This document shows, in pieces, positions 23,501 to 44,401 of a stretch of DNA of 64,000 bases. The stretch comes from Blepharisma stoltei ATCC 30299 (lineage: Eukaryota; Protista; Ciliophora), in contig CBFDEM010000021.1 in the NCBI GenBank assembly GCA_965603825.1, forward strand, positions 372,001-436,000. Reading direction: 5' to 3'. Both the position numbers and the translations under genes were made by a program. Numbering within the stretch: the first letter of the stretch is position 1; each line of letters begins with the position of its first letter. Under the pieces are notes generated by a model. The model had not been told where the DNA came from. It did not search any database and saw only the letters and a list, made by a program, of their open reading frames with translations.

Positions 23501-26500
23501 AAACGTATAAGTATCTGACACACCGATTGCTTTAAATCGAGCTTTTACTGTAAACTGTGAGCTTGGCTCAGAAACTTTGCTTGAAATTGTGACTCTATTT
23601 GTTAATTGGCTGAAAATGACTAAAAAGTTATTTGAGTCATAAGCATAAATTTTGAAGCCTTGCGATCCTGTTGAAGTGGCTCCAGTCTTGCTTGGGTTTT
23701 TCATTCCAGTTACAGTGATATCTATATTTCCACTATAGTCAGAAGTAAACCCAGATACCTGAATCACTCTGTCATAGACAGTGCATTGATATATTGATGA
23801 ACAAATAGGAACTGGGCTGCTATCACTAAATCTTGGAAACTCTGCAGGCATGTAAACTTGAAGATATCCTCCTTTAGGAATGGAAATGCTTGGGACAACA
23901 GTCATTGCAAGCTGGACATAGACTGCGCTAGCAGAGTAGTCTGATAAAGTAAGCACTGAAATTGCCGCCGTTTGAGCTGCCAGTCCAGGATTAGTTGAAA
24001 TGGCTGAAGTAGTAAAAACTTCTGCAACATTATTTGATTTTACTGTATAGTAGTTCACATAGCAGCTGGAACAAGTAAAAACTGATGCAGGATTTTTCAT
24101 GTTTTGCAGTTCAATAGAATAGGAATCTGCAGCAAGAGAGCTTGCACCTAAATATATAACTATTATGCCTGTCTGTGGATATAAGTTATATGAAAGACTA
24201 GATAAAATGTTTGATGCTCCTTTCTTTATATTCACAGTCAAGCCAGAGTCTGGGATAGGGTAAACTGATGGGAAAGTGATGGTAATTAAATCATTTGCAC
24301 TCAGCGCAGTTAAAATATTGAAACTTAAGGTTGCTGTGCATGTTGCTCCGACTGTATTTTGTGATAGAGATAAGGTTTGGGCTAGATTAGAGGTTTGGGT
24401 TGTAGTAGAAATAGCTGAAAGAGTCTTATAAGATATATCATAGATTCAAACGATTGTTCCATCTGAGTACGTTTGATATATCCCAACGCCAACCGTTGGC
24501 TTGTAAGCGTCAGTTGCTCCATTTTTAATTTTAGAGAAATGGATCTCTATAAGTGTGTTTGCCTGAATTTCTTGGAAATTGGTGATCGATATATACGAAT
24601 TGGATGGTCTGGTTAGAGTTGAGTCTCCCTTCGTAAAAATACACTTTAGGCTTTCACCTTCTTTCGGAAGGATTCCTAGGATCTTAGCGCAAGGAACAGA
24701 ATTTCCAGTGGAATAGTACCCTAAGTTATCTGAAAAGCTTTGGAAAATTTCGAAATTTATTTGTATAGTCCCTTGTGGTCCTGCTTCGTTTTTAACAGTA
24801 TTTGGATATCCAGGCGGAATATATTGCGATGTTGTGAAAGAAACCTTGAGGACAGTCGGATAATTCGTTTCTAAATTCGTTAAAGAAATTGATAGGTCTG
24901 CAAAAGTTGACGAAGGCGAGATATATAATGATGGAAATGAAATTTCAATAAGGCTGTTATCATACATAGCGTAGGCCTCTAGTTGATAATATCCTGGGGA
25001 ATCTGGAACTCTGAACCCATTCACAGTCTGCCCTGTTGTTGTTAATTGTAGAAACGCACACTGATTTTTGAAAAACCCAGAAAACTCACTGGTATCCTCT
25101 GATTGCAGCAAAACTTCTAATATATTTTGCTTTCATGTGCAGGACTTGGAAACAGGATGAGTGTAGTTTCGGCTTCAATATAGAGGAAAATTATTATAGT
25201 ATAAATCTCCTTCTCCAATTACACAATATGGATTGCCACCTGCAGGTCCAAAACCAGCTGGAAAACTGATATATAACGTTGTGCCCATCGGCAAATCAAT
25301 GTGAGGCTGGATCCTTAAATATATATCTCCTATTTCTCCTGCTCTGATTTTTCTTGAATAAAGATCAGTTGTCACTCAATCAACCCAAAAGTCATAAGTA
25401 CTAGAATAGCTTTGAACTGTCCCAAAAGACTGAGAAGTATCTTCCTGTGCAAATAAGCTTGTATCGGTTGAGTCATATAAGCGCACTTCTAAATTCCCTG
25501 CAGGCCCAGCAGTACTTGAAGATAAAGCACCTATAGAGACTTTTATATGAGATGCGTTATCATAATTAAAGTTTGTCAAAATCACATGTTTGCTTGCACA
25601 AGATGTTGACGTGCAATCACTTTTGCATGATAAAGGCGGAGTTGCTATTGTGGTTACTCCTGAATAAGATCTGCATTGGTAGTCTATGAACTGAAAAGAG
25701 GAAGGGAAAATGATGTCAACTCTTTTTAAAGGAGAGCTTGAAGAAACTGGAAGAATATCGATTGTATAAATATCGTAGTAGTTTTTAGGGATTGTGGATC
25801 CTTGCTGGTTTGTTATTGTCACGCTGGTGGGAGCTCGAGGATTGAAGGAATCTAACTTTATGGTATGAATTTCGATCAATACTTGCTTGGAGATAACGTA
25901 TAGAGTTAGAGTGTATTGCGAATTTTGATGATAATTTGCAGAAATAAAGCCTGTGTTCGAGTTTAAAGTAAGTGTTTTTCCATTAAGATTATATGTAGCA
26001 GATAAGGTGATATCAGTTGTTATTCATTGAGAGGATCCGAAAGATAATGATTTGCATGTAGCAGAACCATCACAGCTCCCTGCCACTTTATCTCCTGCAA
26101 ATGCTGGCAAATCGAATGCAGAGTCCATCATTAGAATATATGAGCCACCTGCAGCATCAACAGTGCCTGAAGGCGAAGAAAGAGTAATGACAATTCCATT
26201 ACTGGCAAAGTCAGTTAAAGTTAGAGTTGTTGAAGAAGTTGCAGTTGAATCTGATATCGAAGCTGGAGAAAAAGTGCTCAAGCTTTTATATAAAAATACA
26301 TCATCTTCATATTTAATCAAATCATAGTCGAAGTACTCTTTCACTATTGTTAGTTTTGCTATACAATTGAGGTCCTGTGAAAATATTGTATCAGCATCAA
26401 GAGTTGGATTTTTAATATTTGCAATTCTTATAGTTGAGCTCACTCCTGAGGTTATTGCTAATCCAGTAATTTCTATATTTACAGGGTTATAAGAAGTAGA

Positions 26501-29500
26501 AATATCTGGAACTGTAAACTTGCAGATAGCAGCTTGAAGAGTAGATCCCTCAAATTCGCCACAATTAAGGGTGACTGATTTGCCAGTTAGTGCCCCAATG
26601 CCGAGATCTGGATCAAAAAGCTTGTCAAGTCCATTGAACGTAGGGAGAGAAAGACGGATAACATCAGTTGCGCTAATACTACTTGCTAGAGTCATCACTA
26701 TATCAAGAAAAGTTGAATAGCCTTTATTTGTGTGGCCAAGCTTTATTGACAAAGATGATATCTTCGCCCCATACAAAAGCTGAGTGAACTTGAACATTTG
26801 CACACTTAAAGGAGAGGCCACGTTAGCATTCAGGTACCAAGAAGTTCCATAGGCTTCAGTAATTGAGCTTGGCAATAATATTCCATTGTTGCTATCAGAG
26901 TCAGCAAATCTATATAAAATTTGAATCTGTCTAGAGCTTGCAGCGGGGATTGTCATTTGTTCAGGAATTTCTATTTGGATATAGTTTGGAGTCGTATGTG
27001 AAGTGCATTTCTCTGCTCGGACATAGTTGATTCCATCAGTTACAATGCACTGAAGTTGAAGATACTGATTGGAAGACGTAGTACTTAAAAAGGAAGCAGA
27101 AGAATCTAAATAAAAGTCAATTGTGTCATGAAAGCTGTATCCATTTGTTCTAGGCGTTATGTCAAAGATAATTCCTGAATACTCTCCAGGTCTTGAAGGG
27201 TATTGGGGTTTGTATTGCTGGCCGAAGGTTGACGAGGCTAATGCCTGAGGTGCACTTAAAATAGATGATGCTGAGAGACTTGCTGTGTTAGACTCAATGA
27301 GAGTATTTGTGTCACCATTAATTCCATAGATCTGAACTTCAAAAGAAGTAATCGCAGTTGTGGTAGATGTTGTAGCTGAAGTTAAAGTTCCAGAAATAAA
27401 TATAGGGTTGGTGGAATCGGTGTATGCTGAGAATCCAGTTATTTTTCATTTTTGAGGATTTGAAGACGCTTGACAATTCCAGTTTCCTGTTAAGCCATTT
27501 TGAACCCAGCAATTAGTACTGAGAGCTGTGAACTCGCTTGGGATCAAAATTAAAATGCTACCTCCTTTAGGGATTGGTTTGATTGGATTTATCTTTATAG
27601 TATACGTATCTGTTCTTCCTGAATAAGGCCCATATGTTCCTTCTTCAAGAAGCGTTGGGATCAAGCCAGTTGTGGTTTCTCTATCCAAATTAAAAGTGGA
27701 GTAAGTCAGTGAGTCTGTGTAAGCTCCGTTATACCATATCCATCCAATCCATGAAACTTGAGCTCCATAGGCTGGAGTGGCAAAAGCGAGATAGTCTTTG
27801 GTTGGAGATGAAGCCAAACTTCAAGCTGTTGACGGAAATGTTGCAATATAAGAATGGATTGGGAAAATATAAGTCTCTGTAGGGCCTGTAACCCCAGATA
27901 GACTAAAGTAATTATTGTTCATTTTTAAAACGCAAGCACCAATTTTTCCATTCGAAGGATCATATTGTATATCTTGAGAGCCTTTAATAGTAAAAGTTGC
28001 AGTGTTCGTAGTGCTTGAAATAGCTTTCGAATCATATGAAACTGATAAGGATGTTTGAGAATTTGGAGGGCTTTGAGCTGTTTCAGTCATATAAATATAG
28101 TTGAATTCCCGATAAAAAAGATACTGAAAATCATATGTTGTGCTTGAGGTTCACTGTCTTGCATACATTTTGATATTAATTATCTTTTCAGCATCATTTG
28201 GATTCGTAACTGGTAAAATGACAATTTTTGAAGTTCCAGAAGATATAGCGTCATATTTTCTTATCCATATTTCTGCATTCGTATTAGAATGGCCTCTTCT
28301 TAAGTAGCAGGTTGACGAAAACCCTGCACAATCAGTAATTGCCCAATCATCTGTATAATCCGTAGCACTCACAGAAGTTCCTAGGTTTGGGGTTCATACT
28401 GAACTATCAAATTCCAATATAATTTCTGACTTTCCATCAGAGGAACCGGAAGTATAACCAATTCCCTGAGCCAGTGACTGCTGGAATGATATGTAAAACC
28501 CATTCATGGTATTTTTTGCTTTAACAAAGTGCTCAATAGTACAAGAAGCAAACTGAGGGGGAGCGATGAAAAGTTCAGTCTTGAAATAGTAGTAAAAGTC
28601 ATCATTCCGCACCATTACCTTATAACGATAGTTTGAGCTCGGATTTTGGAACTTGAAGCCTTGATTTTCGGGATTTATAGATGTAACGACAACATTTCAG
28701 ACTTGAGATGCTGATATATCAGTTGTTTCTGGAGCATACACTTTGATTTGGTTATATGCCGGACTCGAGGAAGTAATCTGGCTATAAATGCAGTCATAGG
28801 ACATATATGTTGTTGAACTGCTTATTCACAGAGCTCGGCAGGTATATGGTTCTGATGATGATGTCACAAACACTTCGACAGCTGTGGTGATTGTGATGTA
28901 TCCAGTCTTTTTAGTGATTGGCTTAGAGTCAGTTTTAATTGAAAATTGAAGATCCCCATACTCACCTTGCCTTATTGGTACTTTTGAATCTCGCAGTCCA
29001 GGAGAAACTACTGAAGATTTCTTTAAAGCAATCTTAGGTGAAATTGTAATATCTTTGGTAATTGAATTCATGACTGAGTGGCTACAAGTTTCTTCTTGGC
29101 AAAATTTCAAAGTGATTGGTTTACCCCCAGAAGAATTTGGATTTGTTACAGGGAGTATAATTGTTATTGTTTCTTGGCTATATGTAAATCCTGATACTAA
29201 GAAAAAGTTATGTGTGTTATCTTTTTTGCATGAGCCGAACCCATTCTGATTGTTTAACTTAGTGCTATCTGAGAATATAAAATCACATCTAAATCCAAGA
29301 ACAAACTCATCTGGAAAAATGATTTGGAAATAAGAACTTTTAGGGTAATTTTGGCCAACTTTTATTGTAAGACTATATTTCATTGTAAGTCCTTGAGAAA
29401 GATCAACTGAATCATATGCTGAAATGCTAGTTGTACTATCAAAAGTATCAGGATCATACTCCTTATCATTATTACTAAATGTTACTTCGGATTTTACATC

Positions 29501-32500
29501 CTGATCCTTTATAAAGGTGGCAACAACAATATTGGTTAATGGATTGTAGTTCAGATTGGTCCATGATGTAAAATGTCAGGTAGTTTCTGAAGATGTAATT
29601 GCTGATTTCGGCTGACAAATAATGGTGTATAAAGGCTCCAAAATCAAGCTTAATTGACACTCAGAAATTATTACACTTGTTCCAATTGCGTATGGGAACT
29701 TAAAAATTATTAATTCAGATCCAGCAACAATATTAGAGCTGCTAACTGTAAGTGAAATTGTTTGAGACGAAGCCCAAGTGTTTTTGGGGTTTAAGTTTGA
29801 AGTATATGAATTTTCGGTTGGAGTAGTTGGATTTGCTGATGAGAAGGTTGTCAGAGCATATCAGATGACCCCCTCTGATACATATGTGTCTCATTTATCA
29901 GAATCCAACTTTATTAGCCTTACTCTGACATAAGATGTTAATCCAGAGCTAGAGTAAAGGGTAATTTGAGGAATGAAAAGATCTATTTGATCAGAACTTG
30001 TGAATGTTACTGGAATAATAACAATGGCTGGCCTATAATTGATGTCAGTATCTGATGAGCCTTTATTCTGGCCAAATCTGATATAGCAGCTAACCTGGTG
30101 AGTAACTTTGCTAGAGTCGCTGTAAGCACATCCGAGAGTAGTTTGCGATGCCATGCCAAGTGATTGATCATAATAATCTATGCCATTGAAATGAGTGGGA
30201 AATTCAGCAATTAAATAACTTGGATCAGGGATTGTAGTTTTAAGGGAAATTTTAAAAATTGATTTAGAATTTTCCTTAGCAATCAGTGGAATGACTTTTA
30301 GGGTGCTGAAGGCTGTTTGACCTAAAATATCTACAAATTCGGAAACCGCCCATTTTGCAGCTGTGCCAGCTGAATCATAAAGAGATACAATTATATATGG
30401 CTTTCCTGATGAAGGGAAAGCTATACCATTTTTTACCTCTCCAGTAGTGAAAATGCGTAATATTCACTTAAGATTATTTTCTATTGTCTTTAGTGATGGC
30501 ATAGCTATAGTCCACTTCTTGGAAGTTGAGTCGAAAGAGCATTTCTGAGAGCTATACTCGATACCATTAGAATCAATGAACTTGCAGACTGCTCTGCCTG
30601 TTGATGGGGTATAAGAAAAAGGATAAGAACTGCCAGTAGAAGGAACAGTTATCGATATATTGTCTGTAGATAATGGAGATGCAGCTAATTTAAAAATTAG
30701 CGTTAATTGTCCCTCAGAACCTCGTATAGGAGTCAAAGATGATTTCATAACATAATAGTTGCTAAATAAATCATCTGCAGATAATATATTATACTGGGAG
30801 TTCTGCGATTGGGGACCACCTGAACATTGATCTATAGTCTGTGAGCCTGCAGAATCTTTATGCGTGCTTATTATATATTGGCCTGATATTAAAGATGAAA
30901 TAGTTACCATTCCTTTAACAGTTAGTGTACTATCTGCATTACAACCTCCAAATCCACTTATAAGCCACCTCTGATTCGAGTCTGTTGGTTCACATTTTAG
31001 AAGATTTCCATTAAATGAAGTTCCGCAGCCAGTAGCTGTCATTCTGCAAGCTATTGAAGATGGATTAGTAGTCGTTGAAGTAATCCCTGTGGGAAATAAA
31101 ATACTTGTACTTCCTTGGCTTGGGATAGCATTTGGAATTGTATAACTGAAAGTTATTTCCCAGAATGAGTATGGATCAGTACTTGAATTATCATCGATAC
31201 CACCAGAACTGATTTGAATAGTGTCAGAATTAAATGTGTATTGTTCAAGGAGCATCCCGTTTGAAATTGCATAGCCTTCTATATATTTTGTCGTAGTGTA
31301 GCTATAAAAAACATTTTTAAATTCAAAAGTAGTTTCAGGTGTAGACGACCCAATTATCTGCTGCTGAGGGATATAAAGCATTCACCCACTGCTTGGAATC
31401 ATTTTGCATATTCCTGTATCTGCTGGAGATGCAGAATTGCTTACAGATGCTTTGCTTGACGAAGATAATGAGAAATCTGTAGGACTAAAAATGAATATAA
31501 AAGCGTCAGTCTTTGATTCAATATTTTGAGAAGGACTAAAAATCAAATTAAATTCAGTAAACACTTTTTGAGTGCTAGGGTTGCTTTTTTGATAAGTTAA
31601 TAGAGTGTTTGAGTTGGATTTTATTGTGAAAAAATTTTTGAGAGCTAAGCCATATTTTTTATTTGCTCCCAAAGCATAAACAAAAATATCTGTAGAGTAT
31701 GTATCCGAAGGATTTACAATATTTGAAATTCATAAAGTTGCTAGACTGCCTGCATCAATTTTATTATTAACAAATACTTTCAAATATAAGATTTTCGGCA
31801 GGGTATAATCTTGCTCATTATGGTTCAAGAAAGTGCAAATTTGTTCACTTTTTAGACTTCCCTCAGATGTGTAAGCCAGATAACAGTTTCCGTTTGCGTT
31901 ACTTGAGGTTGTTGAACTGAATAGAGAGTTTGAGGCGGCATCAAAAAGGGGAAATCCAACTAGAATTTCACTAGGCTTAGTTATGTCAGCATCTACCTGA
32001 AAGTTAATTTCAATGAATGTAGATTTAGTTTTGTCCGAAACATATGAATTCCCGTATAGCTTGGTAAATGGAGAGTAAATTTGTAAAGGAACTAATTTTG
32101 CCGTATAGTCACTTGATGATGTAGTTGAACCAGACTTGAAGATATCTAAGCTCGCTTTGATAGTATCAGAATCAATTTTAAACCCAATATTTGTGCCATA
32201 AGTTCCAAATGAAACTTTATATTTTTTTGACGCATCTAATTTCAGGCTGAGAGGAGCATATATATCTATTGTTATAGGGCTAGTTGTAGAAACTAAGACC
32301 CTTGCGGCAGAATATATATCAACTGCTGATACATCTTGAAAGGTGGCCCAATATGTTGATGAATCACTGGTGATAATGTTTGGATCAAAAGCAAGGCGAA
32401 TTATGCCATTTCCCGCATCTATATCTTCTAACGGTCTTATCTGAAAAGTAATGGGAGAAACTTCGTTAATAACAGCAATTTTGGCTGGAGCTTCGAAAGA

Positions 32501-35500
32501 AGCTGGAAAGCGCAAATCTTTAGATGAAATATATTTAATGTTGCTATTTTCTATATTCATTGAAATTTGTTCATCACTATACATATTTGTATCTGAAAAT
32601 GAAGTAGGTACTGAATAAAATGCACTAACATGAACTGAGTTATCACTATTTGATAGCATTGTGACGTATAAATATAGAGCAAAAGGGCTAGAAGATTTTT
32701 TTATATCAAAATTTGTAAAGTTCAAGTATACTTTTCCTGATGCCTCTGCTTGATTCATTATTATTCCATACTCTCTTTGGTCATTTATGAGAACATATGA
32801 TTTTGAATTGCTGATAGTTAAAGTGGCTGAATTAAATGAAACTATGAGAGCCCCCAGATTTGAGAGTTCCTGGTCAAAAGCCCCAGATATATAAAGCTGA
32901 GTATCTTCCTGAGTTCAGATGGCTGTATGGGGGTTTTTATTTGTTATTGAATAGTCTGGTTGATTAGCCGCAAAAGTAGAAGTGCCAGAGAATGGTTGAA
33001 AGCCATTTGAAGATGAATAGACATAGCCATAATATGTATAATCGCCACTAATTCAAGGATTGCTTATTTTCAGCTTTAAGGTTGATGATGATGAATTCAC
33101 AAGGAACTTACCATAAATGCAGGGACATGGCTTGCTAGAAAATGATATAATATTGTCAAGAGTTCCATCAGATGTTGTTGGTGCTGAAGAGCTATCTAAA
33201 CCTTCGAACCTCATCAAAACATAGTCACCATTAATAAATGAGAGTCCGTTCAATGTAAATGTTCATATAGGTATGGCACCTGCATTAGAGAATTCAGGTG
33301 AATAATTAACATTTACATTAGATGAGCTACTTGCGTCAATAGTGCTAATTTTGTTAGAATAGAACTTGTAGTATAATTTATTGATTCCATAAAGTATGAA
33401 ATTAACTTTTATTTCAGAGTCTCCACTAGCAGGAAATTTTACCATTGGAAAATATGCATGCATATTCTCTGAGCCATTAGGAGTCTCCATGAATAAGCAC
33501 GAAATGGTTCCTTGAAGAGAAGAAGAGCTTCCTTTTCGAAGTGAGCAGTTTCAATCTGAGTTTGGATAATTAGTAGAAGAAGAAGAGCTCTGAAAATTGA
33601 AAGGCAGTGAATCTCCGGTATTCAAATTAAGACCTAATGCAGAATCCGTGCTATCGAAAGATACTTCTATAGCAAGACCCAAAGTGTTACCAGCGCCAGC
33701 TAGAGTTGAGTAATCAGGATTTCCTACTCCGAACTCCCCTGTATTAAAGCTCACGTCCAGGACATTAGGCTTTCCTGCATATAAATAATTATTATTTATT
33801 GAGCATGAACCTATGCTACTAGGAAAACTAACTGGCCATGAATAGCCTTCCTTAATATCGCCGTCATTATAAGTTAAAATACTGATATAGCCATATCCTT
33901 TATAACTGATCGCTGCAGAGCAAGGCAGATAGACATTTACTGTTAGTTGTTGGGAAGTGCTAGCTCAAATAGAGTATGAAAAGGCAAGGTCAATTTTGGC
34001 AGGAGATCCATCTCAATCAGGTGAATTATTATATAAATTCTGTCCTCCTTGCTGAACTGTTGATGATGTGCAGGTAGATTTATACCCTGATGAAGGGATT
34101 GCAAAAATATCTGTTCAAACTGTGATTTTATTCATTGAGTAAGAAGGGGTAAAAACGATATTCAAATATGTTGAACTGGAACTGGTAGTTCCTGCAGATC
34201 CATTATTTAATTTCGGTTGTGGTGGTGAAGATAGAGTATGATAAGTGCTTCCACATCTTGCATCTAAAGGATCTTCCCATGCCTTCTTTGTGAACAAATT
34301 CTTGCATTCAGTATCTTGATATACCTCTATCATCACGTCAGCATTTGATACTGGGTTTGTAATAAGCAATTTAATAGAGAAAGGGTAGATTAAGGTCACT
34401 CCAAAAATATATGCAATTCCTTGATCAATTCTCCAAACTACATTTTTTTCAACAGAATTAGTCCCGAATACAAGAAATGACCCATCAAGCCCACTATATT
34501 TTCCATTATTGCCATCTGCAACATAAAATTTGATAGTTGCGCTTCCAAGGGCATTTCATGCACTATCTGTTCCTGATCCGAATGAAAAAGATCAACTCCT
34601 ATAGCTTTGAATGCCAGAGCAATATATTGGATCGAAACTGCTTAAAGTTTCAGGTGTATAACTTAAAGCACCAGTGTTAATTTCATCATCGCTAATAATT
34701 TTAGCCGATAATTCATACTTATTTGTGCATATCCTATTCTTTGCCAAAATCATTAAAAAGCTATTTGACCCACCAATTTTGGAATGGATTGGACCTGGAG
34801 CTTTAAAAGGTGAGTTGCCTCCTGATGATGATAGAGTGATGAATATTCAAGGGCCTTTAGTAAATTTTATTAATGTATTAGGAGCATTGGCAATAATATT
34901 TGAGTAATCGAAACCATCTAACCCAAATTTTATTAGCATAAAATCTGTGTTTGTGGGGATACCTGAAAAAGTGAAAAGATTTTGTGCACCGTAGGAGAAA
35001 GAAAATGATATACCTGATGAAGTTAATGAGGTTGAATCTGGAGCCTTTCCTGATGCAGCGAATACATTTTTGGCAGTCCTTTCTCCTAGGATTTTAAAGT
35101 TTTGTGACATCCTCACAACTCTTATATCAACAATTCCTTTATCATAATCACCAGAGGAATCGGTAAGAGCTGGATTGACAATCCCTGGTATTATTAAAGT
35201 ATAAATTATCTCGGTGCTTTGATCCGTAGAAACAAGGTTTACAATATGGATTTCTGCAGGATGATTTAGATCTTTATCTCCATAATGCAGATAGCATTTC
35301 GTGTCCGTCGACCCACCAGCACAGCCAATCTCATCGCCATTACTGATTCCTGTACCTAAGTCATTCGCAAAGAGTTCGATTGAACTGTCTCGATTAATTG
35401 TTGGAAATTGAATAATAAAAACATCAGTTTTAGTCGGTTGTGATTTTACCTCAATTGTAAAAACATTCGCGACTCCCGTTGTAATATGCATCACACTCAC

Positions 35501-38500
35501 ACTTAAGTATGAAAAAAGTGCTTCTGGCAAAGAATAAAAGTGAATTCCTTCCATATCATTTCCACCGCTGTTTTTGACAGAAACTTTGATATAATTTTCG
35601 CTTGTTGTTGAGTCTTCCAATTTAAGGCCGTCATTTCTATAATCAGCTCCGTGTGTTTTTACAATAAACCTATACTTCGTATTTGCTGTTAGTCCTATAC
35701 TTGGTATCATTTTAATATTTTTTTGGGTATCTTCAAAGGTACAGCTTGCAGAAAATTGGGTTTGAGCGCTTAGAATACTGCAATCCAACGATGCATCTGA
35801 ATCGATTGATGAAAATTTTGAGCTTGATGTTAGCAAAATATAAAATCCAGAAGCGATATCATTACTAGGTGAGAAGAAAAATTCTATTTGAAACTTATCG
35901 CCTGCCTTTACTGTTGTTGAAGGTAGCTCTTGAGTCTCGAAGTTAAAATAATTAGGAGCTGGAAGCAACACTGCTGGAGTGACTGCAATAGTGCTCGTTG
36001 AGTAGAAAAAGAAATTGTCGCTGCAGCTCTTATCAAGATATAAGGATGCTATGATATCTCCACTTCAGTTTTCATCTGGCTTGTAGGTAGATTTGACAAC
36101 AATTATGCTTTGAGTAGTAGCAGTAGTAGGAGTTGAAAATCCCGTAATCTCCAAAGTTTTAGAACTTGCTGAGCAACTCCAAGATCCTCCATTATCAGCA
36201 ACTATGTCTGAAGATAATGAGCTGATATTTTCACAGTAATCAATAATTGCGGCTTCAGGGGTTGTTATCTTCAGGCAATTCGTGTTTGTTAACTTGATAT
36301 AAGGAATTTTTACTGTAAATGTTAAATCGACGATCTGGCCTTTGCTATAATCTGCCAGACTAGGGCTTACAGTTAATAAAGAGCCTGAAGTTAATGCTGA
36401 AGGCAAGGCTGAAGGAACTTCATACTCATACGTTATCTTTGAATCCAAAGAATTGAAGTCCGAATTGGTAGGACTAGAGAGCAAGTAAGCATATATATTA
36501 GTTTCTGCGCTATTGAAATAGGATTTCCCCGCCTTCAAAGACAATTCCAAATTTGAGATAGACTTAATTATCAGGACTTTCGACGATCCATGTATCTGGT
36601 CTTTCGTCGCACCTATTGCAACGTCAGCCTCAGATATGTCAAATGTCGATGGAAAGCATAGATATAAGGTTCACACATTTGAAGATGGCAAGTTTAGCTT
36701 AAAGCTTATAATTGATTGGTCAGTATCTGTGAATGTAGGAAAATATTTTAAGCTAGTTGGCGTAACACCAGAAGTGACTGTGAACACATCATAGTAGGTT
36801 TGAGAATATATCACAGCATCGTTCTTATATCCCGTAACAGTGATATGAATATGAGTACTATCATCTGACGTCCATGCAGGATTCACAATGTTATCGAGAT
36901 AGAAAGCTATATATGATGAACCGGCCGATATACTTCCATCAAATGTAGGAGTTATCTCAATATAAGCAGGGCTCATCTGATTAGTATACCCATGATTAAT
37001 GGTGCAACTTGCAGAGGAAAGTATAGAAGAAGAGTCTATATCGCATGGATAATTGTACCCACTTGCAAGTCCAGTCCCTAAATCAACTGAAAATAAGCTT
37101 GTCCCATGACTGTCTTTAGTTGGAAAATACACTCTAATTTTGTCAATACTAGATGCCAAAGATACACAATCACTGCATGAGATCTTAATTGCGAAAAAGT
37201 TTGCCATTGATGCCGATGTATGCGCTGGAGTCACTTCTAAATTGTCCCATTTATCAGTAGGAGCTATGTTAATATTTAATTTCCCAATCTCATTGGTGCC
37301 TTCCCCAGAGTAAGAAACAGAAATTTGAATTGTTACGCTACCTGGGGTTGAAGGAAGAAGAAGTCCTTCTTTCTCAAAAGTTTCCGAATTTGTCGTCGTG
37401 AAGCTTAAATCTATTTTCGATGAGGCTGGATAATTATCAGGTGCATAAGTAGTTATTGTTAAAGTAGTTGTTGTTGTTGTTGTTGCTGTTGCTGAATAAG
37501 AAGCTTGGCACTTTGTGTCTACTTTTGAGTTCCACAAGCAAATAAGAGTAGATTCTGACAGAATATTTGGAAAGTTCGGAAGAGTTACTACTATGTTCCC
37601 AGCTGAGGTTTGTATTTCCCCTTTAGGAGTGTAAGAGAATACTATAGGGGCACAAGTTCCTATAGGAGCTTCAATAGGAAACTCATACTGTCTTGGAATT
37701 TCAAAATAAGTAGGAGCTTCAACGGTGCTTTCAACTGAATGAATTGTTATACTACTTTTCTCGCTTTGGGTTGTGCTTTGTTTTTCTTTATCCCAAACAG
37801 TATAGACACTGATTGTGTTTGATGTAGATAAGGTTGATGCTGAAGGCATCTTTACAGCTACGATAATCTTATAATTTTTACCATTCAGCAATCCAGATAC
37901 AGGAACATATGTCAATACATTGCTTAAAGTTGTGCAAGAATAGGATTCAAGACTGTTATAGTATGCATAACAATATGCTTCAGTGAGGATGTTGTTTGAA
38001 TTGAAATCAACAACTATAGCTCCACCTGCAGGTATATCAAATTTCGGCGTCACAGTTATCAGCATATCATATGTATCTTGTCCATAATATTCTGGGATAA
38101 AAGAAGGTGTCTCGTAATATCTCACTATTGTTGGCAAAGTTGAAAAGTCAATAGGCGTCAAATTATTGAAAAATGAATTAATCTTGAGGGTTTGAGTCAA
38201 AGTTCTGTCTTGCATGTAATATATGATGATCTTAGGATTAATTGCATCATCATCATCATAATCATGGCTTGGATTAACGGCGTTGCTAATAGTGATTGTT
38301 AAAGGATCCGTTGGTAATGCGCTACCAATTTGGATAATAAGTATCTTTGCAGATTTATCAAGAATGCACATACTGCTAGTGGCAGTGTCCTCACATTTTG
38401 AGTTTGTAGAAAACGAGGTGTCGGCAGGCAAATCCACTAATACATAGTCAGATACACTTCATCCAGCAACTGCAGGATTCGATCGAGGCTTTTGTATTGA

Positions 38501-41500
38501 TGGTGTAGGAATTGTAAGTGTATAAGTGGTTTTTTCGGCAACTAAATTACTACTTGCTGATATTGTTGGAGTCCCAGTAGTAGTACCTGGCGATAATGAA
38601 AATAAGTATCCCAGATTGTTTGCATAGCTATGGCATAATTTTGTGCCTGACAAATTGGATGTCATATCAGCTGCATATATTGAAAGAGAGAATATTTCAG
38701 AATCAAGAAGATCCGGATTCCCGCTTGGGTTCTTGAATTTACTGATGAAAAAATGAAAGCCAGTATCAGCGGTGATGTCTGAATTCGGACTAACATAGAT
38801 TCTTGCGGGCTCATTGTCATCATTTGAGCCTATCTGAAATGTGCATTTTATACTAATAGTGGTATCGCTTCCAGCAATACATGGAACATCGCTATCATCA
38901 GCATATTCATATCCCAAATCATTATCAAAAAATGTTGTTGGGAATTCAATCACAATTCTCCCTCCACTACTTCCAGACGCAGCTGGTATTTTTTGATCGC
39001 ATTTTATTGAAATATCCAATAAGTTTATTGAGTTAGGAATAAAATTTCCCGGGATGACAGTAATACTTGAAAATTCCTCAGGCAATATCTCTACATAGAG
39101 TGTCGAAACGTAAACAATAGTCCCACTTCCATCACAATCAAGGATTAAATCCAATTTGACTTGGTCTTTAATGTTTCACTGCAAGTTTCACTCCAAGCCT
39201 TGATAATTGTCTCTGTTCATTGTTGTGATTGTTAGTCCTAAATCTGTATTTGCAGGAAGGCCTGAGTCTGCAGGGGCATATATCTTATAGATTAAGTTTG
39301 TGCTATCATATATACAATCTGAAGCAAGTCTTTCAACGCCACTACTCTTTCAAATACATCTCAAACCGTAAGGGTGAGTATATGTCATTGATCCAGCCAC
39401 TGTAAGAAATCCTACTCTTTGAATGATTGCATTAGCAGAAGATATTGTCAGCACTAAAGGCCCAATATTCTTTCCTTTCCTTATTGGCTCAGCTCTGTGA
39501 TACATTAATCCCTTGGTTCCAAACTCAGTTGGCAGAAGCTTCTCTGGATGTGAGTTCATAACAATAGGCATGACAACCTCTCCTTTCTCATCAATCAGCT
39601 TATCAGTGTTGGTGCTTTCCCAATATGTTTTAAAATATGCAGTATACGTTGCTGATGCGATTTGAACATTAACAAATAAGCTTATAATATCGGTTTTCTG
39701 GATGTCTGAAGAAAATCCATAGATTGAGATGATTGCATTGGTTGAGGCAGGACTACTCTGTGAATCTGTTAAGACAAACTTCAATCCTTCAGGGTTTATG
39801 GTGCTCTCTGGGGTTAACCGAATACTGTTTTTGTCAATTCCAGATGCTAATCCACCGAATTCTATTTTAATTTGACCAGTGTAGGGAATCGGATTGATCG
39901 GTTGGAGCGTTATTCTGTACAATTCTGGCTGATCTGGGTAAAAGTCATAGTAGCTTGATATTGATACTTGAGTTGGAGCATTATTTTTAAAGTCTCCAGC
40001 ATTTAAATAATGCGATTCGGTAAAGTTATAAGATATTATCTTTTCTAATTTCCTATCCCTGATTATCATTGAAGTGCCCTTAATTTGATATTGATACCCA
40101 GGTGCTGTTATCCCGCCTATCTTAATGTAAAATTGATTTGAGGCTGTAATAATAGAAGAAGTAAGCCGAACTAAAGCATAATTTGCAATAGCAAATTTGA
40201 AGCAATAGCTCTGAGAGTTGTCATTTATTGAACAAGTTATGCTTGACACAGTATAGTCAGCGGGAAGTTTTATCATTACATAGTCAGTTCCACCCAAATC
40301 TTGAGTGGAATGCACCAAGATTAATTTTAAAACCAATCCAGTTTCGTAAAGTTCAGGGCGTTTGCATCCACTCGTACCATAAAAACAATCATTACTGGGT
40401 TCAGGAGAAGTAATAGAGCTTATGCTAGAAGGGAATGATAAGGTTGTGTCTATATAGGAGACTAATTCTTCAGCTTTAGTTACAAAAGTTGGAGACGTTA
40501 GAGTTTGCTCTTCAGCCCTTACTCTTATTTGCATGTCATAATTTGGGTTGGAAGGGTTTTTTATTGGGCCAAGGTAAAAGTGGAAAATTGTTGTGGCTTG
40601 AGAAGAGCTCGTTGACAAGCCTGTAATTTTAATTCTAACATAATCAATATAGCCATGAATAAGTGTGCAAACTATTCCATTTTCAGTTGAATCTGCAAAA
40701 TAAGGACAATCAATTGGACTGTTATTTGCCAAACCTGTTCCCAGATCAAAATCCCATGAAGAGCAAGGAAATTCAAGCCAGACAACTTTTGTGCCAGACA
40801 AAGAAATCCCAATCATGAAATTAAATTCAAGGAAGTTTCATTGGCTCGCGTATTTTTGAAGAGAGTTGATATAGATATATTTAAACCCTTGGGCTTGAAC
40901 ATGCATCCAAGGATTCGCAAACCCGTCGCTATTTTCAAGGCTTAGAGTGGTTATCTTGAACTGATAGTCCCCTGCAGTTGAAGGATATTGAATTCCTACC
41001 TCATCTGCAGTGGCATCATTAAGAGTGCTAATAGAGAGTTCATGCAAGGTACTATCACTCAAATCAGTATCTCTGTTAGTATATACAGTTATATCATTTC
41101 CACTATTTTTGCACCAACTTGAAATCAAGCCATCAATATAGCAATCTAATATTGTTGATGAAGGGACTGAGAAGCCTGTCGGAAGAGTCACTAAAATCTT
41201 TGCATAATTGCTGGTATGATCAGATTTTGTCAAAGTGACGTCTGATGGCAATTGAAAATTGAAAACTATTGGGCCTTTGTCTCCTGCTCTGGCAATAATT
41301 TTTGGAGAAACAAAACTGTGCAAGCTTGCTGCGGATGGAGAATTGCGAGCTGATGAATAATCAAGTGTGACTGTTGTCTGCTCAATCAATTTATTAAGAG
41401 TGTCATCTTCGTCGTTTGACGATATTGTAATGCTAGTTGATGAAAGACTTGAGGGAGCGTTCACGAACCCTAAAAAATCAAAAGAAGTGCTAGATGGCAA

Positions 41501-44401
41501 TTCTCCTGTAAAACTAAGAACATATCTATAACAGGTGTTTGGAGAGCTGCAAGCATCATTTTTTACGTAGCATTTGGCATTGACGCTACTTGGAGAAGTA
41601 ATTTTATAGCATGATGTTTCTGATATTGAATAATCAGCTGGGAATACTACTGAAGCAGTCCCTCCAGCTGTAATTCTTTGGGTGGTTTTGAATTGAAAAC
41701 GAATCAAAGCTCTGTTGGAAAGAACATTGCTTGACGTTGGGGTTAGCATTTCAGTGATTGCAGGAGTAGATCCAACTGCACTATCAAATGTCCCAGGAGT
41801 AAAATCAGTTGTAGAAATTATAGCACAATATGCCACCTCAGAGTTGCTAATTTGATAAACTGTAAAGGTCGTTGTTCCTTTGTATAGCCTATTCTTTAAA
41901 CTAATGCATGGGTTGATGGAGTCAGAATTAATGCTGGTTGAAGAAGATGGATTTTCGAAAATAATCACTTTAAAACTATCTGATATATAAAAGTTGTAGT
42001 TCCCAGCAGTAGCCAAGGAACCTGTGCCTCCACAAATAGAAATGCTATTACTGCTCAATTTTTTGAATTCATTAGGGACTATAATGAACAGCTTATCATT
42101 AGTTGCAAGAGAAATTCCTGAAGAAATAGTTAAGGTGTACTGAGTGTTCACGTATTCGGGGGTATCAGTTCCGCTAACAGTAACAGTCCCAGCGCTGGTG
42201 CAAAGGGAACTTTTTTGTTTAAGTGGAGAATCGCCTGCAAGATCTTTATATTCCAATGGCACTCCATCTGTATCTATAGTTTTCACTGTTGCTTTGGGTG
42301 TATAACCAATAAATTTATTATTTTTGATTCAGTAAAACAGAATATTTGTTGATGCATGGCCAGCTGAAATAAGATTCTGTGAGATAAGCTTGACTTTGGC
42401 AGGAATTAAAGGAGTTCCAGCAGTAATTGTGCAACTAGCACCTGTTCCCCAAACTGAAGTGTCGAAGACGCATTGAAATGAAGAGGTCTCAAGCGAATGC
42501 AAGCCTGTTCCAAGAGTGTTTGGAAATCCAAAATTGCTGGTTATGAAGTCTATTTCAACTCCACCTCCGATTGGAATATCAAGTCCATTGCTTATTGATA
42601 TAGATATTGTATTTTGGTAGTCCACAGAGTAATGCATCAAGTCCCAGCTTGCAGAGCCTTTATTGTTCAATGATGCAATATCAGAAGCGCTGCCAAGTTC
42701 TCTGGGAGCTTGCAAGTAGTTATAGTTCATTTCTTCAGTAAGGCTTAGTCCACTCCCGCTGTCAATTGAAACTTCAACTTTTATTGTCTTCTGTCCTCCT
42801 TGGGTGGCTAAAAATCCAAAATGAGTTTCAGTTGGACTTCCTAGTGTGGTTACTGTTATCGCTAGCGGGCAGCAGCCAAACTCCTCAGTTGATGGAGTGG
42901 TCATCGTTATGGTAGGAGGAGACCCAGATGTATATTGGCAGGAAGAAGCTGGAACTTGATTTTTCCCAAATAAGCAAGAGAGTTGGGTGTAGCTTGGAGG
43001 AACTTGAGTATCGCTTGGAAGATGCAATTTGATTTGGCCAGTTTTCCCATTTGCTGTAGCAGGCAATTCAGTTCGGGTTTGGAGGTAAAACTCAAAAGGT
43101 GCATAGATTCCCAATGGAGGTGTAGTCTTAGCCTTGAACATTTCCACGTTTATTTCTGTGGGTGCGCTTATGCTGGAAAGAGTGATCGTACCTGCTTCGT
43201 TATTTTCATCAATTGTATACCCGCTTGATGTTAATGCTGATATCTTGAAATAACTAGAAGTACCTGAGATTTTTGAATTCATTGCCACTGCTTCCAAAAT
43301 GACTAAGCCAGCTTTAAAATCGTCAAATTGAGTTATAATGATCGAATTTCCTGAAGGAGTGCATATCACAGAGTCTAATGGAGTCAGCCCATTTAAAATT
43401 TTACAATATGAAACTGACTGATACTCAGAAGGGAATGAAACTTTTATGCTTCCTCCTGCTGCAATATCCCCATGAGTTTTAAATCCAATATTATAGGTTC
43501 CTTCAACTGACAAGTGTAAGGGCCTTCCACTAATCTGAACACTTGAAATTACTCCAGGGGCTATATATGGGCCAGAAATTTGACTTGAAATTTGCTGAAC
43601 TGTATAAGTCCCTTTTTCCATGATTTCAGCCAAAAAATACCCTGTAGATCCGCTGTGACTTGGATTTAAAACTCCATAAATTCTCAAAGTTATAGTGCTT
43701 GGTAATATTGACAAGCTGCTTGTTTTTATCTTTAATAAGTCAATATTATCCTGGGTGCAGGAAATATATGAGCTGGTCTCTTCAATATAACATTTTAAAT
43801 TTGAGCTAATTGAAAATTCATTTGGTAGTGAAATCCTTATCCATGAGCCAATTTTTGCGTTTGAATCAGGAGTCATTGTAAATTTGAGTAAAGGAGAATA
43901 ATTCGCCATCAAGCTTCCATCAGCTTGCATGTAGCAATTAAGTGAGGTTGGCGAATCAAAAATCCCAATTGAAGGGTAAAGCTCGTTAGAGTCTTGAACT
44001 ATCCCATTGATCAAAGAGTAGATTTTAAAGTATCCTGTACTTTGCGTCGATAATGGATTTTGAATATTTTCGACTCCTAGGGACATTGTTCCAGCTTTTA
44101 AGGAGGAAAATGATCATGTTATACTGCTCGCATCTCTTGTGCAGGGAATTGAAGTTTTAGCTAGCTGAGAGTACATAAAGCCATTGCACGATGCGCTGCT
44201 AAGGGTTGCAAATTCCTGTGGGAAATGAATTGAAATCTGAGATGGCTCTGAAATACGATTTGGAAGAATGAATTGAAATACATAGAGAGAAAGCAGACCT
44301 TGATTAGTTCTATAAACTGTTATTGGTGTATTTGGATCTGGAGTTATTAATGCAGAAAGAGCCAAGCTAATAAGCAATTGAAATGAAAAGACTCTGATCA
44401 T
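20597..44401 (-). CDS. Giant (7,934 aa) secreted or surface-anchored, beta-rich, Ser/Thr-rich repeat protein
   Basis: 27 track ORFs lie in one frame; 26 end in TGA and only the last ends in TAA. I read all the larger gaps and found no TAA/TAG. 23,805 nt = 7,935 codons. Signal peptide MIRVFSFQLLISLALSA; hydrophobic terminal tail AAFELSIVWAAALVFI. Confidence 0.93.
24450..43550 (-). repeat. About 11 degenerate protein-level tandem repeats of about 590 aa (about 1.78 kb) inside the giant CDS
   Basis: [D/N/T/S/A]-LG-x-G...C motif at about 42512, 40742, 38915, 37079, 35357, 33635, (degenerate about 31920), 30158, 28382, 26603 and 24722; other motifs recur in the same register. Boundaries are approximate. 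Confidence 0.8.

What the first reader, a model, noticed from the sequence alone, without database searches (positions are those of the whole stretch)
24450..43550. Cryptic ~590-aa super-repeat, about 11 copies, in the giant protein
Seen: a motif like F-x-x-DLGTGL-x(5-8)-C...C-x-x-x-x-G-x(n)-PA-x-I-x-I...I-x-NP recurs at 42512, 40742, 38915, 37079, 35357, 33635, about 31920 (degenerate), 30158, 28382, 26603 and 24722. Spacings are 574-627 aa, mean 593. A second motif keeps the same period: IAAGGSIKVSFP, ITAGGTASVVFP, IPYTGQIKIEF, IPAGGAIVVDF, IPSQGSTSILFP, YPKSSYFQIIFP, IPKGGSILILIP, IPKGGYLQVYMP. So does a third: GIYAPFEF, AGDKGPIVF, GKNIGPLVL, GTCAPIVF, AGDKFQIEF, NEVSPITF, GSEGQLTL, GEYGDLQF, GEYSGIIF, GEIGDIYL. 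I see no DNA-level similarity between units, so the duplication is old. Inference: each unit is a cassette of about four beta-sandwich domains, a titin-like super-repeat of a possibly unnamed module.
Basis: partly seen in the sequence, partly recalled or inferred. Interest (0 to 1): 0.85.

Follow-up and report, generated by a model that had tools for sequence, protein, structure and literature searches.

The report
Twelve-unit super-repeat in giant ciliate surface protein
The repeat is real: one 7,934-residue surface protein of the ciliate Blepharisma is built from twelve ~590-residue cassettes of four Ig-like domains each. It belongs to a large ciliate protein family that databases list only as "hypothetical" and that I found in no paper.

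Summary
Observation confirmed, with 12 units rather than 11. Window 44401..20600 (minus strand) is one intron-less ORF of 7,934 codons in Blepharisma stoltei. It has 37 in-frame TGA (Trp in this organism) and no TAA or TAG.

A profile built only from a paralogous giant gene elsewhere in the genome finds 12 tandem full-length units (i-E 1e-47 to 8e-8, mean spacing 593 aa). Shuffled copies score below 0 bits. There is no DNA-level repeat.

Each unit is four diverged copies (A-B-C-D) of one ~145-aa, two-cysteine domain (profile-profile probability 80-96%). An AlphaFold model (pLDDT 82) is all-beta and matches pilin-shaft, integrin-leg and macroglobulin-type sandwiches. No Pfam family matches.

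After the units comes a conserved ~830-aa base: two more such domains, FN3-like domains and a GPI-signal-like hydrophobic end.

The unit profile finds 1,492 database proteins. Every one whose source gives a name is a ciliate "hypothetical" or "unnamed" protein, including ~7,100-aa Tetrahymena proteins.

The ~2,000-aa family members equal unit 1 + unit 12 + base, so the giants are the same protein with ten units intercalated.

The public gene model holds only residues 2950-7934.

Function (a long surface stalk) is inferred. Expression could not be tested.

The parts
20597..44401 (-). Whole gene: ATG at 44401, TAA stop at 20599-20597. It has 7,934 codons, 37 in-frame TGA read as Trp, and no detectable intron.
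   Evidence: one frame, with only TGA inside; homologs most often have W at the TGA positions (25 of ~67 aligned residues); no 15-nt GTA..TAG intron candidate; the three 16-nt candidates equal the chance expectation and would break the frame; collinear with the paralog from aa 21 to 7896.
44333..44401 (-). Signal-peptide-like N-terminus (aa 1-23; hydrophobic core, then T-P-D-P)
   Evidence: it is one of only two segments of the protein with mean Kyte-Doolittle hydropathy >= 1.8 over 19 residues. The paralog and the Tetrahymena relatives start the same way. No dedicated predictor was available.
42608..44278 (-). Unit 1 (aa 42-598), the conserved 'head' unit
   Evidence: It scores 278 bits against unit 1 of the paralog. 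It is the best match of the first unit of all 12 tested ~2,000-aa family members.
40826..42601 (-). Unit 2 (aa 601-1192)
38999..40828 (-). Unit 3 (aa 1192-1801)
37172..38995 (-). Unit 4 (aa 1803-2410). Its domains C and D and most of B are in the structure model.
35447..37162 (-). Unit 5 (aa 2414-2985). Its domain A is in the structure model.
33737..35449 (-). Unit 6 (aa 2985-3555), one of the two most diverged units
   Evidence: The independent profile matches only its first 157 aa well.
32018..33715 (-). Unit 7 (aa 3563-4128), the most diverged unit
   Evidence: i-E 8e-8. It scores 20 bits against unit 7 of the paralog.
30236..32011 (-). Unit 8 (aa 4131-4722)
28475..30250 (-). Unit 9 (aa 4718-5309)
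26696..28450 (-). Unit 10 (aa 5318-5902)
24827..26701 (-). Unit 11 (aa 5901-6525)
   Evidence: It scores 195 bits against unit 11 of the paralog.
23081..24808 (-). Unit 12 (aa 6532-7107), the conserved membrane-proximal unit
   Evidence: It scores 168 bits against unit 12 of the paralog. Unit 12 of this protein or of the paralog is the best match of the second unit of the ~2,000-aa family members.
20648..23080 (-). Conserved base module (aa 7108-7918): two more domains of the unit type, then FN3/Ig-like domains with a helical insert
20600..20647 (-). C-terminal hydrophobic tail (aa 7919-7934) with nothing after it: GPI-attachment-signal-like
   Evidence: helix at model residues 834-848. In 27 of 48 family C-termini the last 16 residues are strongly hydrophobic; many are preceded by small residues such as N-S-A-A, D-S-G-S or D-S-A-S. 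No GPI predictor was available.
20597..35554 (-). The part covered by the public protein model (aa 2950-7934; 4,985 aa)
   Evidence: P0001 is 100% identical to aa 2950-7934. It lies in NCBI GCA_914767885.1, record CAJZBQ010000021.1.

Best explanation
SHOWN. Window 44401-20597 (minus strand) is one gene of Blepharisma stoltei, where UGA encodes Trp. It encodes a 7,934-residue protein built on three levels.
(1) A ~145-residue all-beta domain with two conserved cysteines.
(2) Four diverged versions of that domain in a fixed order (A-B-C-D), forming a ~590-residue unit.
(3) Twelve units in tandem, 48 domains in all. These are followed by a better-conserved ~830-residue base: two more such domains, FN3/Ig-like domains and a terminal hydrophobic stretch.

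The 12-unit order is older than the duplication that produced a second collinear giant gene (8,012 aa) on contig 45.

The common ~2,000-residue members of the family consist of unit 1 + unit 12 + base. The giants are that same protein with ten units inserted between a conserved head and a conserved foot. The end units are far better conserved between the two giants than the middle ones.

INFERRED. The protein enters the secretory pathway. The grounds are a signal-peptide-like start, a paired cysteine in every domain, and a strong, gene-specific depletion of N-x-S/T sequons. It is probably tethered to the outer face of the plasma or ciliary membrane by a GPI anchor. It then acts as a long, semi-rigid stalk of about 54 sandwich domains. 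At 4-5 nm per domain, as in other Ig/FN3 chains, that is roughly 0.2 micrometre. The middle units would serve mainly as a spacer that sets how far the conserved head (unit 1) stands from the membrane. Short and giant paralogs would present the same head at two heights in a surface coat, for contact, adhesion or protection.

The confidence given (0.6) is for the whole statement. The architecture alone I put at about 0.9, and the surface-stalk function at about 0.4.
For: Single ORF and genetic code; PMC9942806 (41 Mbp, UGA = Trp, 15/16-nt introns).

Organism: a protein that NCBI names as Blepharisma stoltei is encoded at 100% identity in this genome. The public record is GCA_914767885.1.

Twelve units.

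Four related domains per unit.

Beta-sandwich fold.

Base module.

Position-specific conservation between the paralogs: diagonal scores 278, 102, 79, 130, 50, 50, 20, 49, 49, 53, 195 and 168 bits, against 16-55 bits off the diagonal.

Short form = unit 1 + unit 12 + base: 12 of 12 tested members.

Secretory and surface indications: N- and C-terminal hydrophobic segments; family-wide GPI-like ends; two nearly invariant Cys in domain A of the family alignment; N-x-S/T sequons 33 observed against 110 +/- 7.8 expected (z = -9.9), while 11 neighbouring genes show 44 against 37.8.

Family breadth: 1,492 proteins at E <= 1e-3. Full four-domain units occur in Tetrahymena and in environmental giants.
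Against: The public annotation translates only the last 4,985 codons.

Signal peptide and GPI signal were judged by eye and by hydropathy, not with dedicated predictors. A terminal membrane helix without a tail, or cleavage and release, would look the same.

The Tetrahymena relatives end in polar tails, not hydrophobic ones, so the anchoring mode is not uniform in the family.

Confidence: 0.6

Rival explanations
1. Same architecture, but the product is a released structural protein rather than a membrane-tethered stalk. It could be a component of the cyst wall, of extrusome or pigment-granule contents, or of an extracellular fibre such as a mastigoneme. The hydrophobic end would be removed or would serve only in sorting.
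For: Foldseek lists the Chlamydomonas mastigoneme protein among the matches of the base module (8wa2, E 4e-15). Giant sandwich chains are typical of extracellular fibres. The Tetrahymena relatives lack the hydrophobic end.
Against: The hydrophobic C-terminal stretch preceded by small residues recurs in most complete heterotrich-type family members. That pattern is typical of GPI attachment signals. Nothing here speaks for polymerisation.
Confidence: 0.2
2. The surface stalk is specifically a cell-cell adhesion or recognition molecule, for example in gamone-induced pairing of Blepharisma or in prey contact. On this reading the head unit is a ligand-binding site rather than part of a passive coat.
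For: The closest folds are domains of adhesins and pili: LrpA, FimA, SpaA, antigen I/II and PrgB. The distal unit 1 is the best-conserved unit.
Confidence: 0.15
3. The public model is right. Only codons 2950-7934 are translated, and the upstream 2,949 codons are a separate gene or an untranslated relic.
For: The deposited protein starts at Met2950.
Against: No TAA or TAG occurs in 2,949 upstream codons. The upstream part is collinear with the paralog from aa 21 and holds five regular units. It has orthologous fragments in other assemblies: P0041 at 54% identity, and P0006 and P0007 covering aa 1-2551. A product starting at 2950 would lack a signal peptide, although it is made of cysteine-paired extracellular-type domains. 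The annotators' own gene range already extends 2,508 nt upstream of their coding start, and the rest carries only four small calls of 76-99 aa.
Confidence: 0.05
4. The periodicity is a by-product of Ser/Thr-rich composition and chance motif recurrence.
For: Pairwise identity between units is only about 15-25%. Most unit pairs score only 16-48 bits in blastp.
Against: A profile from a different gene finds 12 in-register units at i-E down to 1e-47, whereas shuffled sequence scores below 0 bits. The same unit is found in Tetrahymena and in environmental proteins.
Confidence: 0.01

Closest known systems
Titin A-band super-repeats (7- and 11-domain patterns of Ig and FN3 domains)
   Same: Both are hierarchical repeats: one sandwich fold, a fixed multi-domain pattern, and tandem copies of that pattern. 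Position identity is kept across paralogs. Foldseek lists a titin fragment and the thick filament among the matches of the base module.
   Different: There is no sequence relationship. This protein is secreted or surface-type (signal peptide, cysteine pairs, GPI-like end), not sarcomeric. Its domain is larger, ~145 aa against ~100. It has no kinase.
Shaft domains of Gram-positive pili and fibrillar adhesins (LrpA 8wb8, FimA 3qdh, SpaA 3htl, RrgB, antigen I/II, PrgB); bacterial DUF11/CARDB repeats
YcnI / DUF1775 (7me6, 3esm)
   Different: YcnI is a single-domain bacterial copper-binding protein. The copper ligands were not examined, and there is no sequence similarity.
Integrin alpha leg domains (calf-1) and alpha-2-macroglobulin MG domains
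   Different: No beta-propeller, thioester or other defining domain is present, and there is no sequence similarity.
Ciliate GPI-anchored surface antigens (Paramecium SAgs, Tetrahymena Ser proteins; PMC12113882, PMC4136848)
   Same: Both are high-molecular-mass ciliate surface proteins with a GPI-type C-terminal signal.
   Different: By those papers' abstracts the surface antigens are cysteine-rich. This protein has 1.5% Cys, two per domain, and a sandwich-domain architecture.
Pfam DUF2808 (PF10989, bacterial, function unknown)
   Same: It is the only Pfam family to pass its cut-off anywhere in the family: 28.0 bits against a cut-off of 25.3, on P0016, an ortholog fragment of the paralogous giant. 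The profile length of 146 equals the domain size. It also turns up as a weak Atlas neighbour.
   Different: It does not pass on the window's protein (best E 0.34) or anywhere in this genome (best 21.2 bits).

Membership tests
Titin-type super-repeat (as an architectural class) | Tandem Ig/FN3-type beta-sandwich domains | tested here: met
   AlphaFold2 models with pLDDT 82.3 and 88.7 are all-beta, and their matches are Ig-like arrays.
Titin-type super-repeat (as an architectural class) | A higher-order period: a domain is closer to the domain one period away than to its neighbours, and positions keep their identity between homologs | tested here: met
   Full-length unit profiles align in register 12 times. 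The A/B/C/D blocks are only remotely alike. Unit i is the best match of unit i of the paralog in 10 of 12 positions.
Titin family (homology) | Sequence homology to titin Ig/FN3 domains, a kinase domain, sarcomeric location | tested here: not met
   No Pfam I-set, fn3 or Pkinase hit passes threshold. The N- and C-termini are of secretory type.
Pfam fn3 (PF00041) | Score above the gathering threshold (25 bits) | tested here: not met
Pfam DUF2808 (PF10989) | Score above the gathering threshold (25.3 bits) | tested here: not met
   Window units: best E 0.34. Whole genome: best 21.2 bits. It passes only on P0016 from another organism, at 28.0 bits.
Gram-positive pilin / CnaB-type shaft domains | Intramolecular isopeptide bond residues and a sortase motif | not tested
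   There is fold similarity only. The residues were not examined, and a sortase pathway is not expected in a eukaryote.
GPI-anchored protein | N-terminal signal peptide, plus a C-terminal signal: a small-residue attachment site, a short spacer and a terminal hydrophobic stretch with no cytoplasmic tail | tested here: inconclusive
   The pattern is present in the window's protein and the paralog. In 27 of 48 family C-termini the last 16 residues are strongly hydrophobic. No dedicated predictor or biochemical test was available.
Ciliate immobilisation / surface antigens | Cysteine-rich protein (as described in the abstracts of PMC4136848 and PMC12113882) | tested here: not met
   Cys is 1.5% of residues, 123 in 7,934 aa, with two per domain.
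The ciliate family defined here (unit + base module) | One or more ~590-aa A-B-C-D units followed by the ~830-aa base module at the extreme C-terminus | tested here: met
   About 50 of the top 150 hits carry the base module at their very end.

The most novel reading that the evidence does not exclude
The family is a set of surface 'rulers'. One conserved head (unit 1) and one conserved foot (unit 12 + base + anchor) are separated by either nothing (~2,000-aa forms) or an ordered, position-specific string of ten four-domain cassettes (giants). Ciliates would then build a layered surface coat of defined thickness, about 0.05 and 0.2 micrometre. The ordered middle units would be more than spacer: they would be docking sites for distinct partners, as in titin. 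The 12-unit order would date back to early ciliate evolution.
Probability: 0.2. Interest if true: 0.75.

Novelty: new variant of a known kind. Interest (0 to 1): 0.55.

Why it matters
Giant chains of sandwich domains with super-repeats are known from muscle (titin) and from bacterial adhesins. An ordered 12 x 4-domain array in a protist surface protein appears to be undescribed. No paper in the library holds the two Tetrahymena gene identifiers, and every database name I saw is 'hypothetical' or 'unnamed'.

The result has four practical consequences.
1. It defines a new domain family with 1,492 database members that has no Pfam entry.
2. It corrects a public gene model that omits 37% of the protein.
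3. It shows that the giants are stretched versions of a common ~2,000-residue protein. That gives a simple, testable idea: length sets the height of a conserved head above the membrane.
4. Tetrahymena has relatives of the family, giants included, so the idea can be tested in a genetically tractable ciliate.

Tried and rejected
- Pfam on ten TGA-free pieces, on the 23 unit rows and on three relatives gave nothing above threshold for the window.
- The word-indexed homolog search with the 595-aa piece found nothing. The length window and the need for shared words make that blank uninformative. The exhaustive profile search then found 1,492 proteins.
- A sequence-profile search of the PDB gave only chance-level hits, best E 0.02.
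- DUF2808 as the domain's identity was rejected for the window.
- Introns were looked for and none found.
- DNA-level repeats were looked for and none found.
- Bacterial origin: no tRNA genes were found in the window with ARAGORN. The neighbours are eukaryotic: UBC, ARF, DnaJ, an ABCB transporter and kinases.
- Literature searches for giant ciliate proteins returned only the intracellular Spirostomum Sfi1-like proteins and unrelated papers.
- The first unit alignment (A1) misplaced some short fragments, aligning B-type domains under A. It was replaced by A2.
- Only two structure jobs were allowed, so the units were not modelled one by one and no single-domain model was searched.

Full report
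WHAT THE DNA HOLDS

With the bacterial code the region breaks into many ORFs. One minus-strand frame from 44428 to 20600 has no TAA or TAG, only 37 TGA, and ends with TAA at 20599-20597. The first ATG is at 44401, which gives 7,934 codons.

The neighbouring ORFs are eukaryotic: ubiquitin-conjugating enzymes, ARF, DnaJ, an ABCB transporter and kinases. The assembly has 41.46 Mb in 64 contigs.

A protein that NCBI names 'unnamed protein product [Blepharisma stoltei]' is encoded at 100% identity on contig 36 of this genome, with three TGA read as sense. The public copy of the window's own gene lies in GCA_914767885.1. The genome paper reports 41 Mbp, 66% AT, UGA = Trp and introns of 15-16 nt (PMC9942806).

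Within this gene, the residue that homologs most often place opposite the TGA codons is W: 25 of about 67 aligned residues. The next most frequent are F, L and I.

No 15-nt GTA..TAG intron candidate exists. The three 16-nt candidates equal the chance expectation and would break the frame.

The natural translation (TGA = Trp) was used only in scripts.

THE OBSERVATION

The second and third motifs each fall in one alignment block.

Blastp self-hits lie at multiples of about 590 aa.

A profile of the window's units finds 12 full-length units in a different gene, at i-E 1e-62 to 6e-14. A profile built only from that other gene finds 12 units in the window's protein, at i-E 1e-47 to 8e-8 with mean spacing 593 aa. 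Twenty shuffles give at most -0.1 bits.

So the repeat is real. It has 12 copies, aa 42-7107, window 44278-23081. It has no trace at DNA level.

ANATOMY OF A UNIT

Splitting the unit alignment into four blocks and comparing them as profiles gives weak, in-register similarity (E 1e-4 to 2e-2). With a 97-row family alignment (A3) the four blocks are clearly related: probability 80-96%, E 1e-5 to 1e-8. Each block has two conserved Cys, and two are nearly invariant in block A.

The AlphaFold2 model of aa 1982-2576 has pLDDT 82.3 and is all-beta.

- Foldseek matches integrin alpha legs, PrgB Ig-like domains, antigen I/II and antibodies (E 2.5e-9 and weaker).

These values are generic for large Ig-like sandwiches. 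No Pfam family passes.

THE REST OF THE PROTEIN

The protein starts with a hydrophobic signal-like segment and ends with 16 mostly hydrophobic residues and no tail.

RELATIVES

A second giant gene (G000:C45:35775-59813, 8,012 aa, 16 TGA) is collinear over its whole length at 22-28% identity. Unit i is the best match of unit i in 10 of 12 positions; unit 6 is a near tie and unit 7 is unresolved. So the 12-unit array predates the duplication.

Units 1, 2, 4, 11 and 12 are much better conserved than units 5-10.

The genome holds at least 23 full-length base modules and at least 8 paralogs of about 2,000 aa.

The unit profile finds 1,492 proteins at E <= 1e-3 among 1.84 billion representatives, 136 of them at E <= 1e-30. 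Those with names are 'hypothetical' or 'unnamed' ciliate proteins. They include T. thermophila TTHERM_00259620 and TTHERM_000252299, and ~7,100-aa proteins of T. malaccensis and T. utriculariae. The Atlas neighbours are ciliate clusters without a Pfam family.

Full four-domain units recur in environmental giants and in the Tetrahymena giants. Other relatives have plain arrays of the single domain.

In all 12 tested ~2,000-aa members, the first unit is closest to unit 1 of the giants and the second to unit 12. The base module sits at their very end. The giants therefore equal the short form plus ten intercalated units.

HOW IT PROBABLY WORKS (INFERENCE)

Four things point to an extracellular, probably GPI-tethered protein:
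- the signal-like start;
- the cysteine pair in each domain;
- the family-wide pattern of small residues followed by a terminal hydrophobic stretch;
- a threefold depletion of N-x-S/T sequons. Counts are 33 against 110 +/- 7.8 for this protein and 34 against 103 for the paralog. Other giants show the same depletion, but the neighbouring genes do not.

About 54 sandwich domains in a row would span roughly 0.2 micrometre. With well-kept ends and a fast-evolving middle, the simplest model is a stalk whose length sets the height of a conserved head above the membrane.

Rivals are a released fibre or wall protein, a dedicated adhesion molecule, and the truncated public product. The last is unlikely, given the open frame, the collinearity, the regular units and the orthologous fragments upstream of codon 2950.

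LIMITS

- No signal-peptide or GPI predictors were available.
- Only one unit-length stretch and the base were modelled.
- Literature searches were limited to the held library.

EARLIER NOTES

Earlier notes of this scan on other parts of the genome also read it as B. stoltei with TGA = Trp. None concerned this family.

Noticed in passing
window 35555-44401 (minus strand): The public protein model (P0001, 4,985 aa, NCBI GCA_914767885.1) starts at codon 2950 of the ORF. The first 2,949 codons hold the signal peptide and units 1-5. In the public record they are unannotated or covered by four small calls of 76-99 aa. The annotators' gene range nevertheless extends 2,508 nt upstream of their coding start.
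   Followed up: partly
window 20600-44401 (minus strand); also G000:C45:35775-59813: N-x-S/T sequons are about threefold depleted in both giants: 33 against 110 expected (z = -9.9) and 34 against 103 (z = -8.0). The same holds in several environmental and Tetrahymena giants. It does not hold in the ~2,000-aa paralogs or in 11 neighbouring genes (44 against 37.8).
   Followed up: partly
G000:C45:35775-59813 (+); loci L004-L006: There is a second giant gene of 8,012 codons with 16 TGA. It is collinear with the window's gene at 22-28% identity and has the same 12 units and base. Both giants have separate orthologous fragments in other assemblies, at 38-71% identity.
   Followed up: yes
G000:C45:21525-35042 (minus strand); loci L007, L004: Three tandem ORFs of 1,143-1,167 codons lie just upstream of the second giant gene. 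They were not examined.
   Followed up: no
P0016 residues 608-702; L008 (G000:C32:717583-717864): Pfam DUF2808 (146 positions, bacterial, function unknown) passes its cut-off on one ortholog fragment (28.0 bits). It scores 21.2 bits on the N-terminal domain of a paralog in this genome. A distant link between the ciliate domain and DUF2808 is possible but unproven.
   Followed up: partly
P0173-P0178 (Tetrahymena proteins of 7,106-7,458 aa): Several Tetrahymena giants start with a signal-peptide-like segment and have 3-8 recognisable units. They end in polar tails instead of a hydrophobic end, so anchoring may differ between ciliate classes. Their central 1,200-3,000 aa are not matched by the unit profile.
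   Followed up: partly
window 28385-29333 (+): Long antisense ORFs of 213 and 177 codons, reading TGA as Trp, lie opposite the giant gene. The first would have 18 Trp. They look like by-products of the sense strand's codon bias rather than genes.
   Followed up: no
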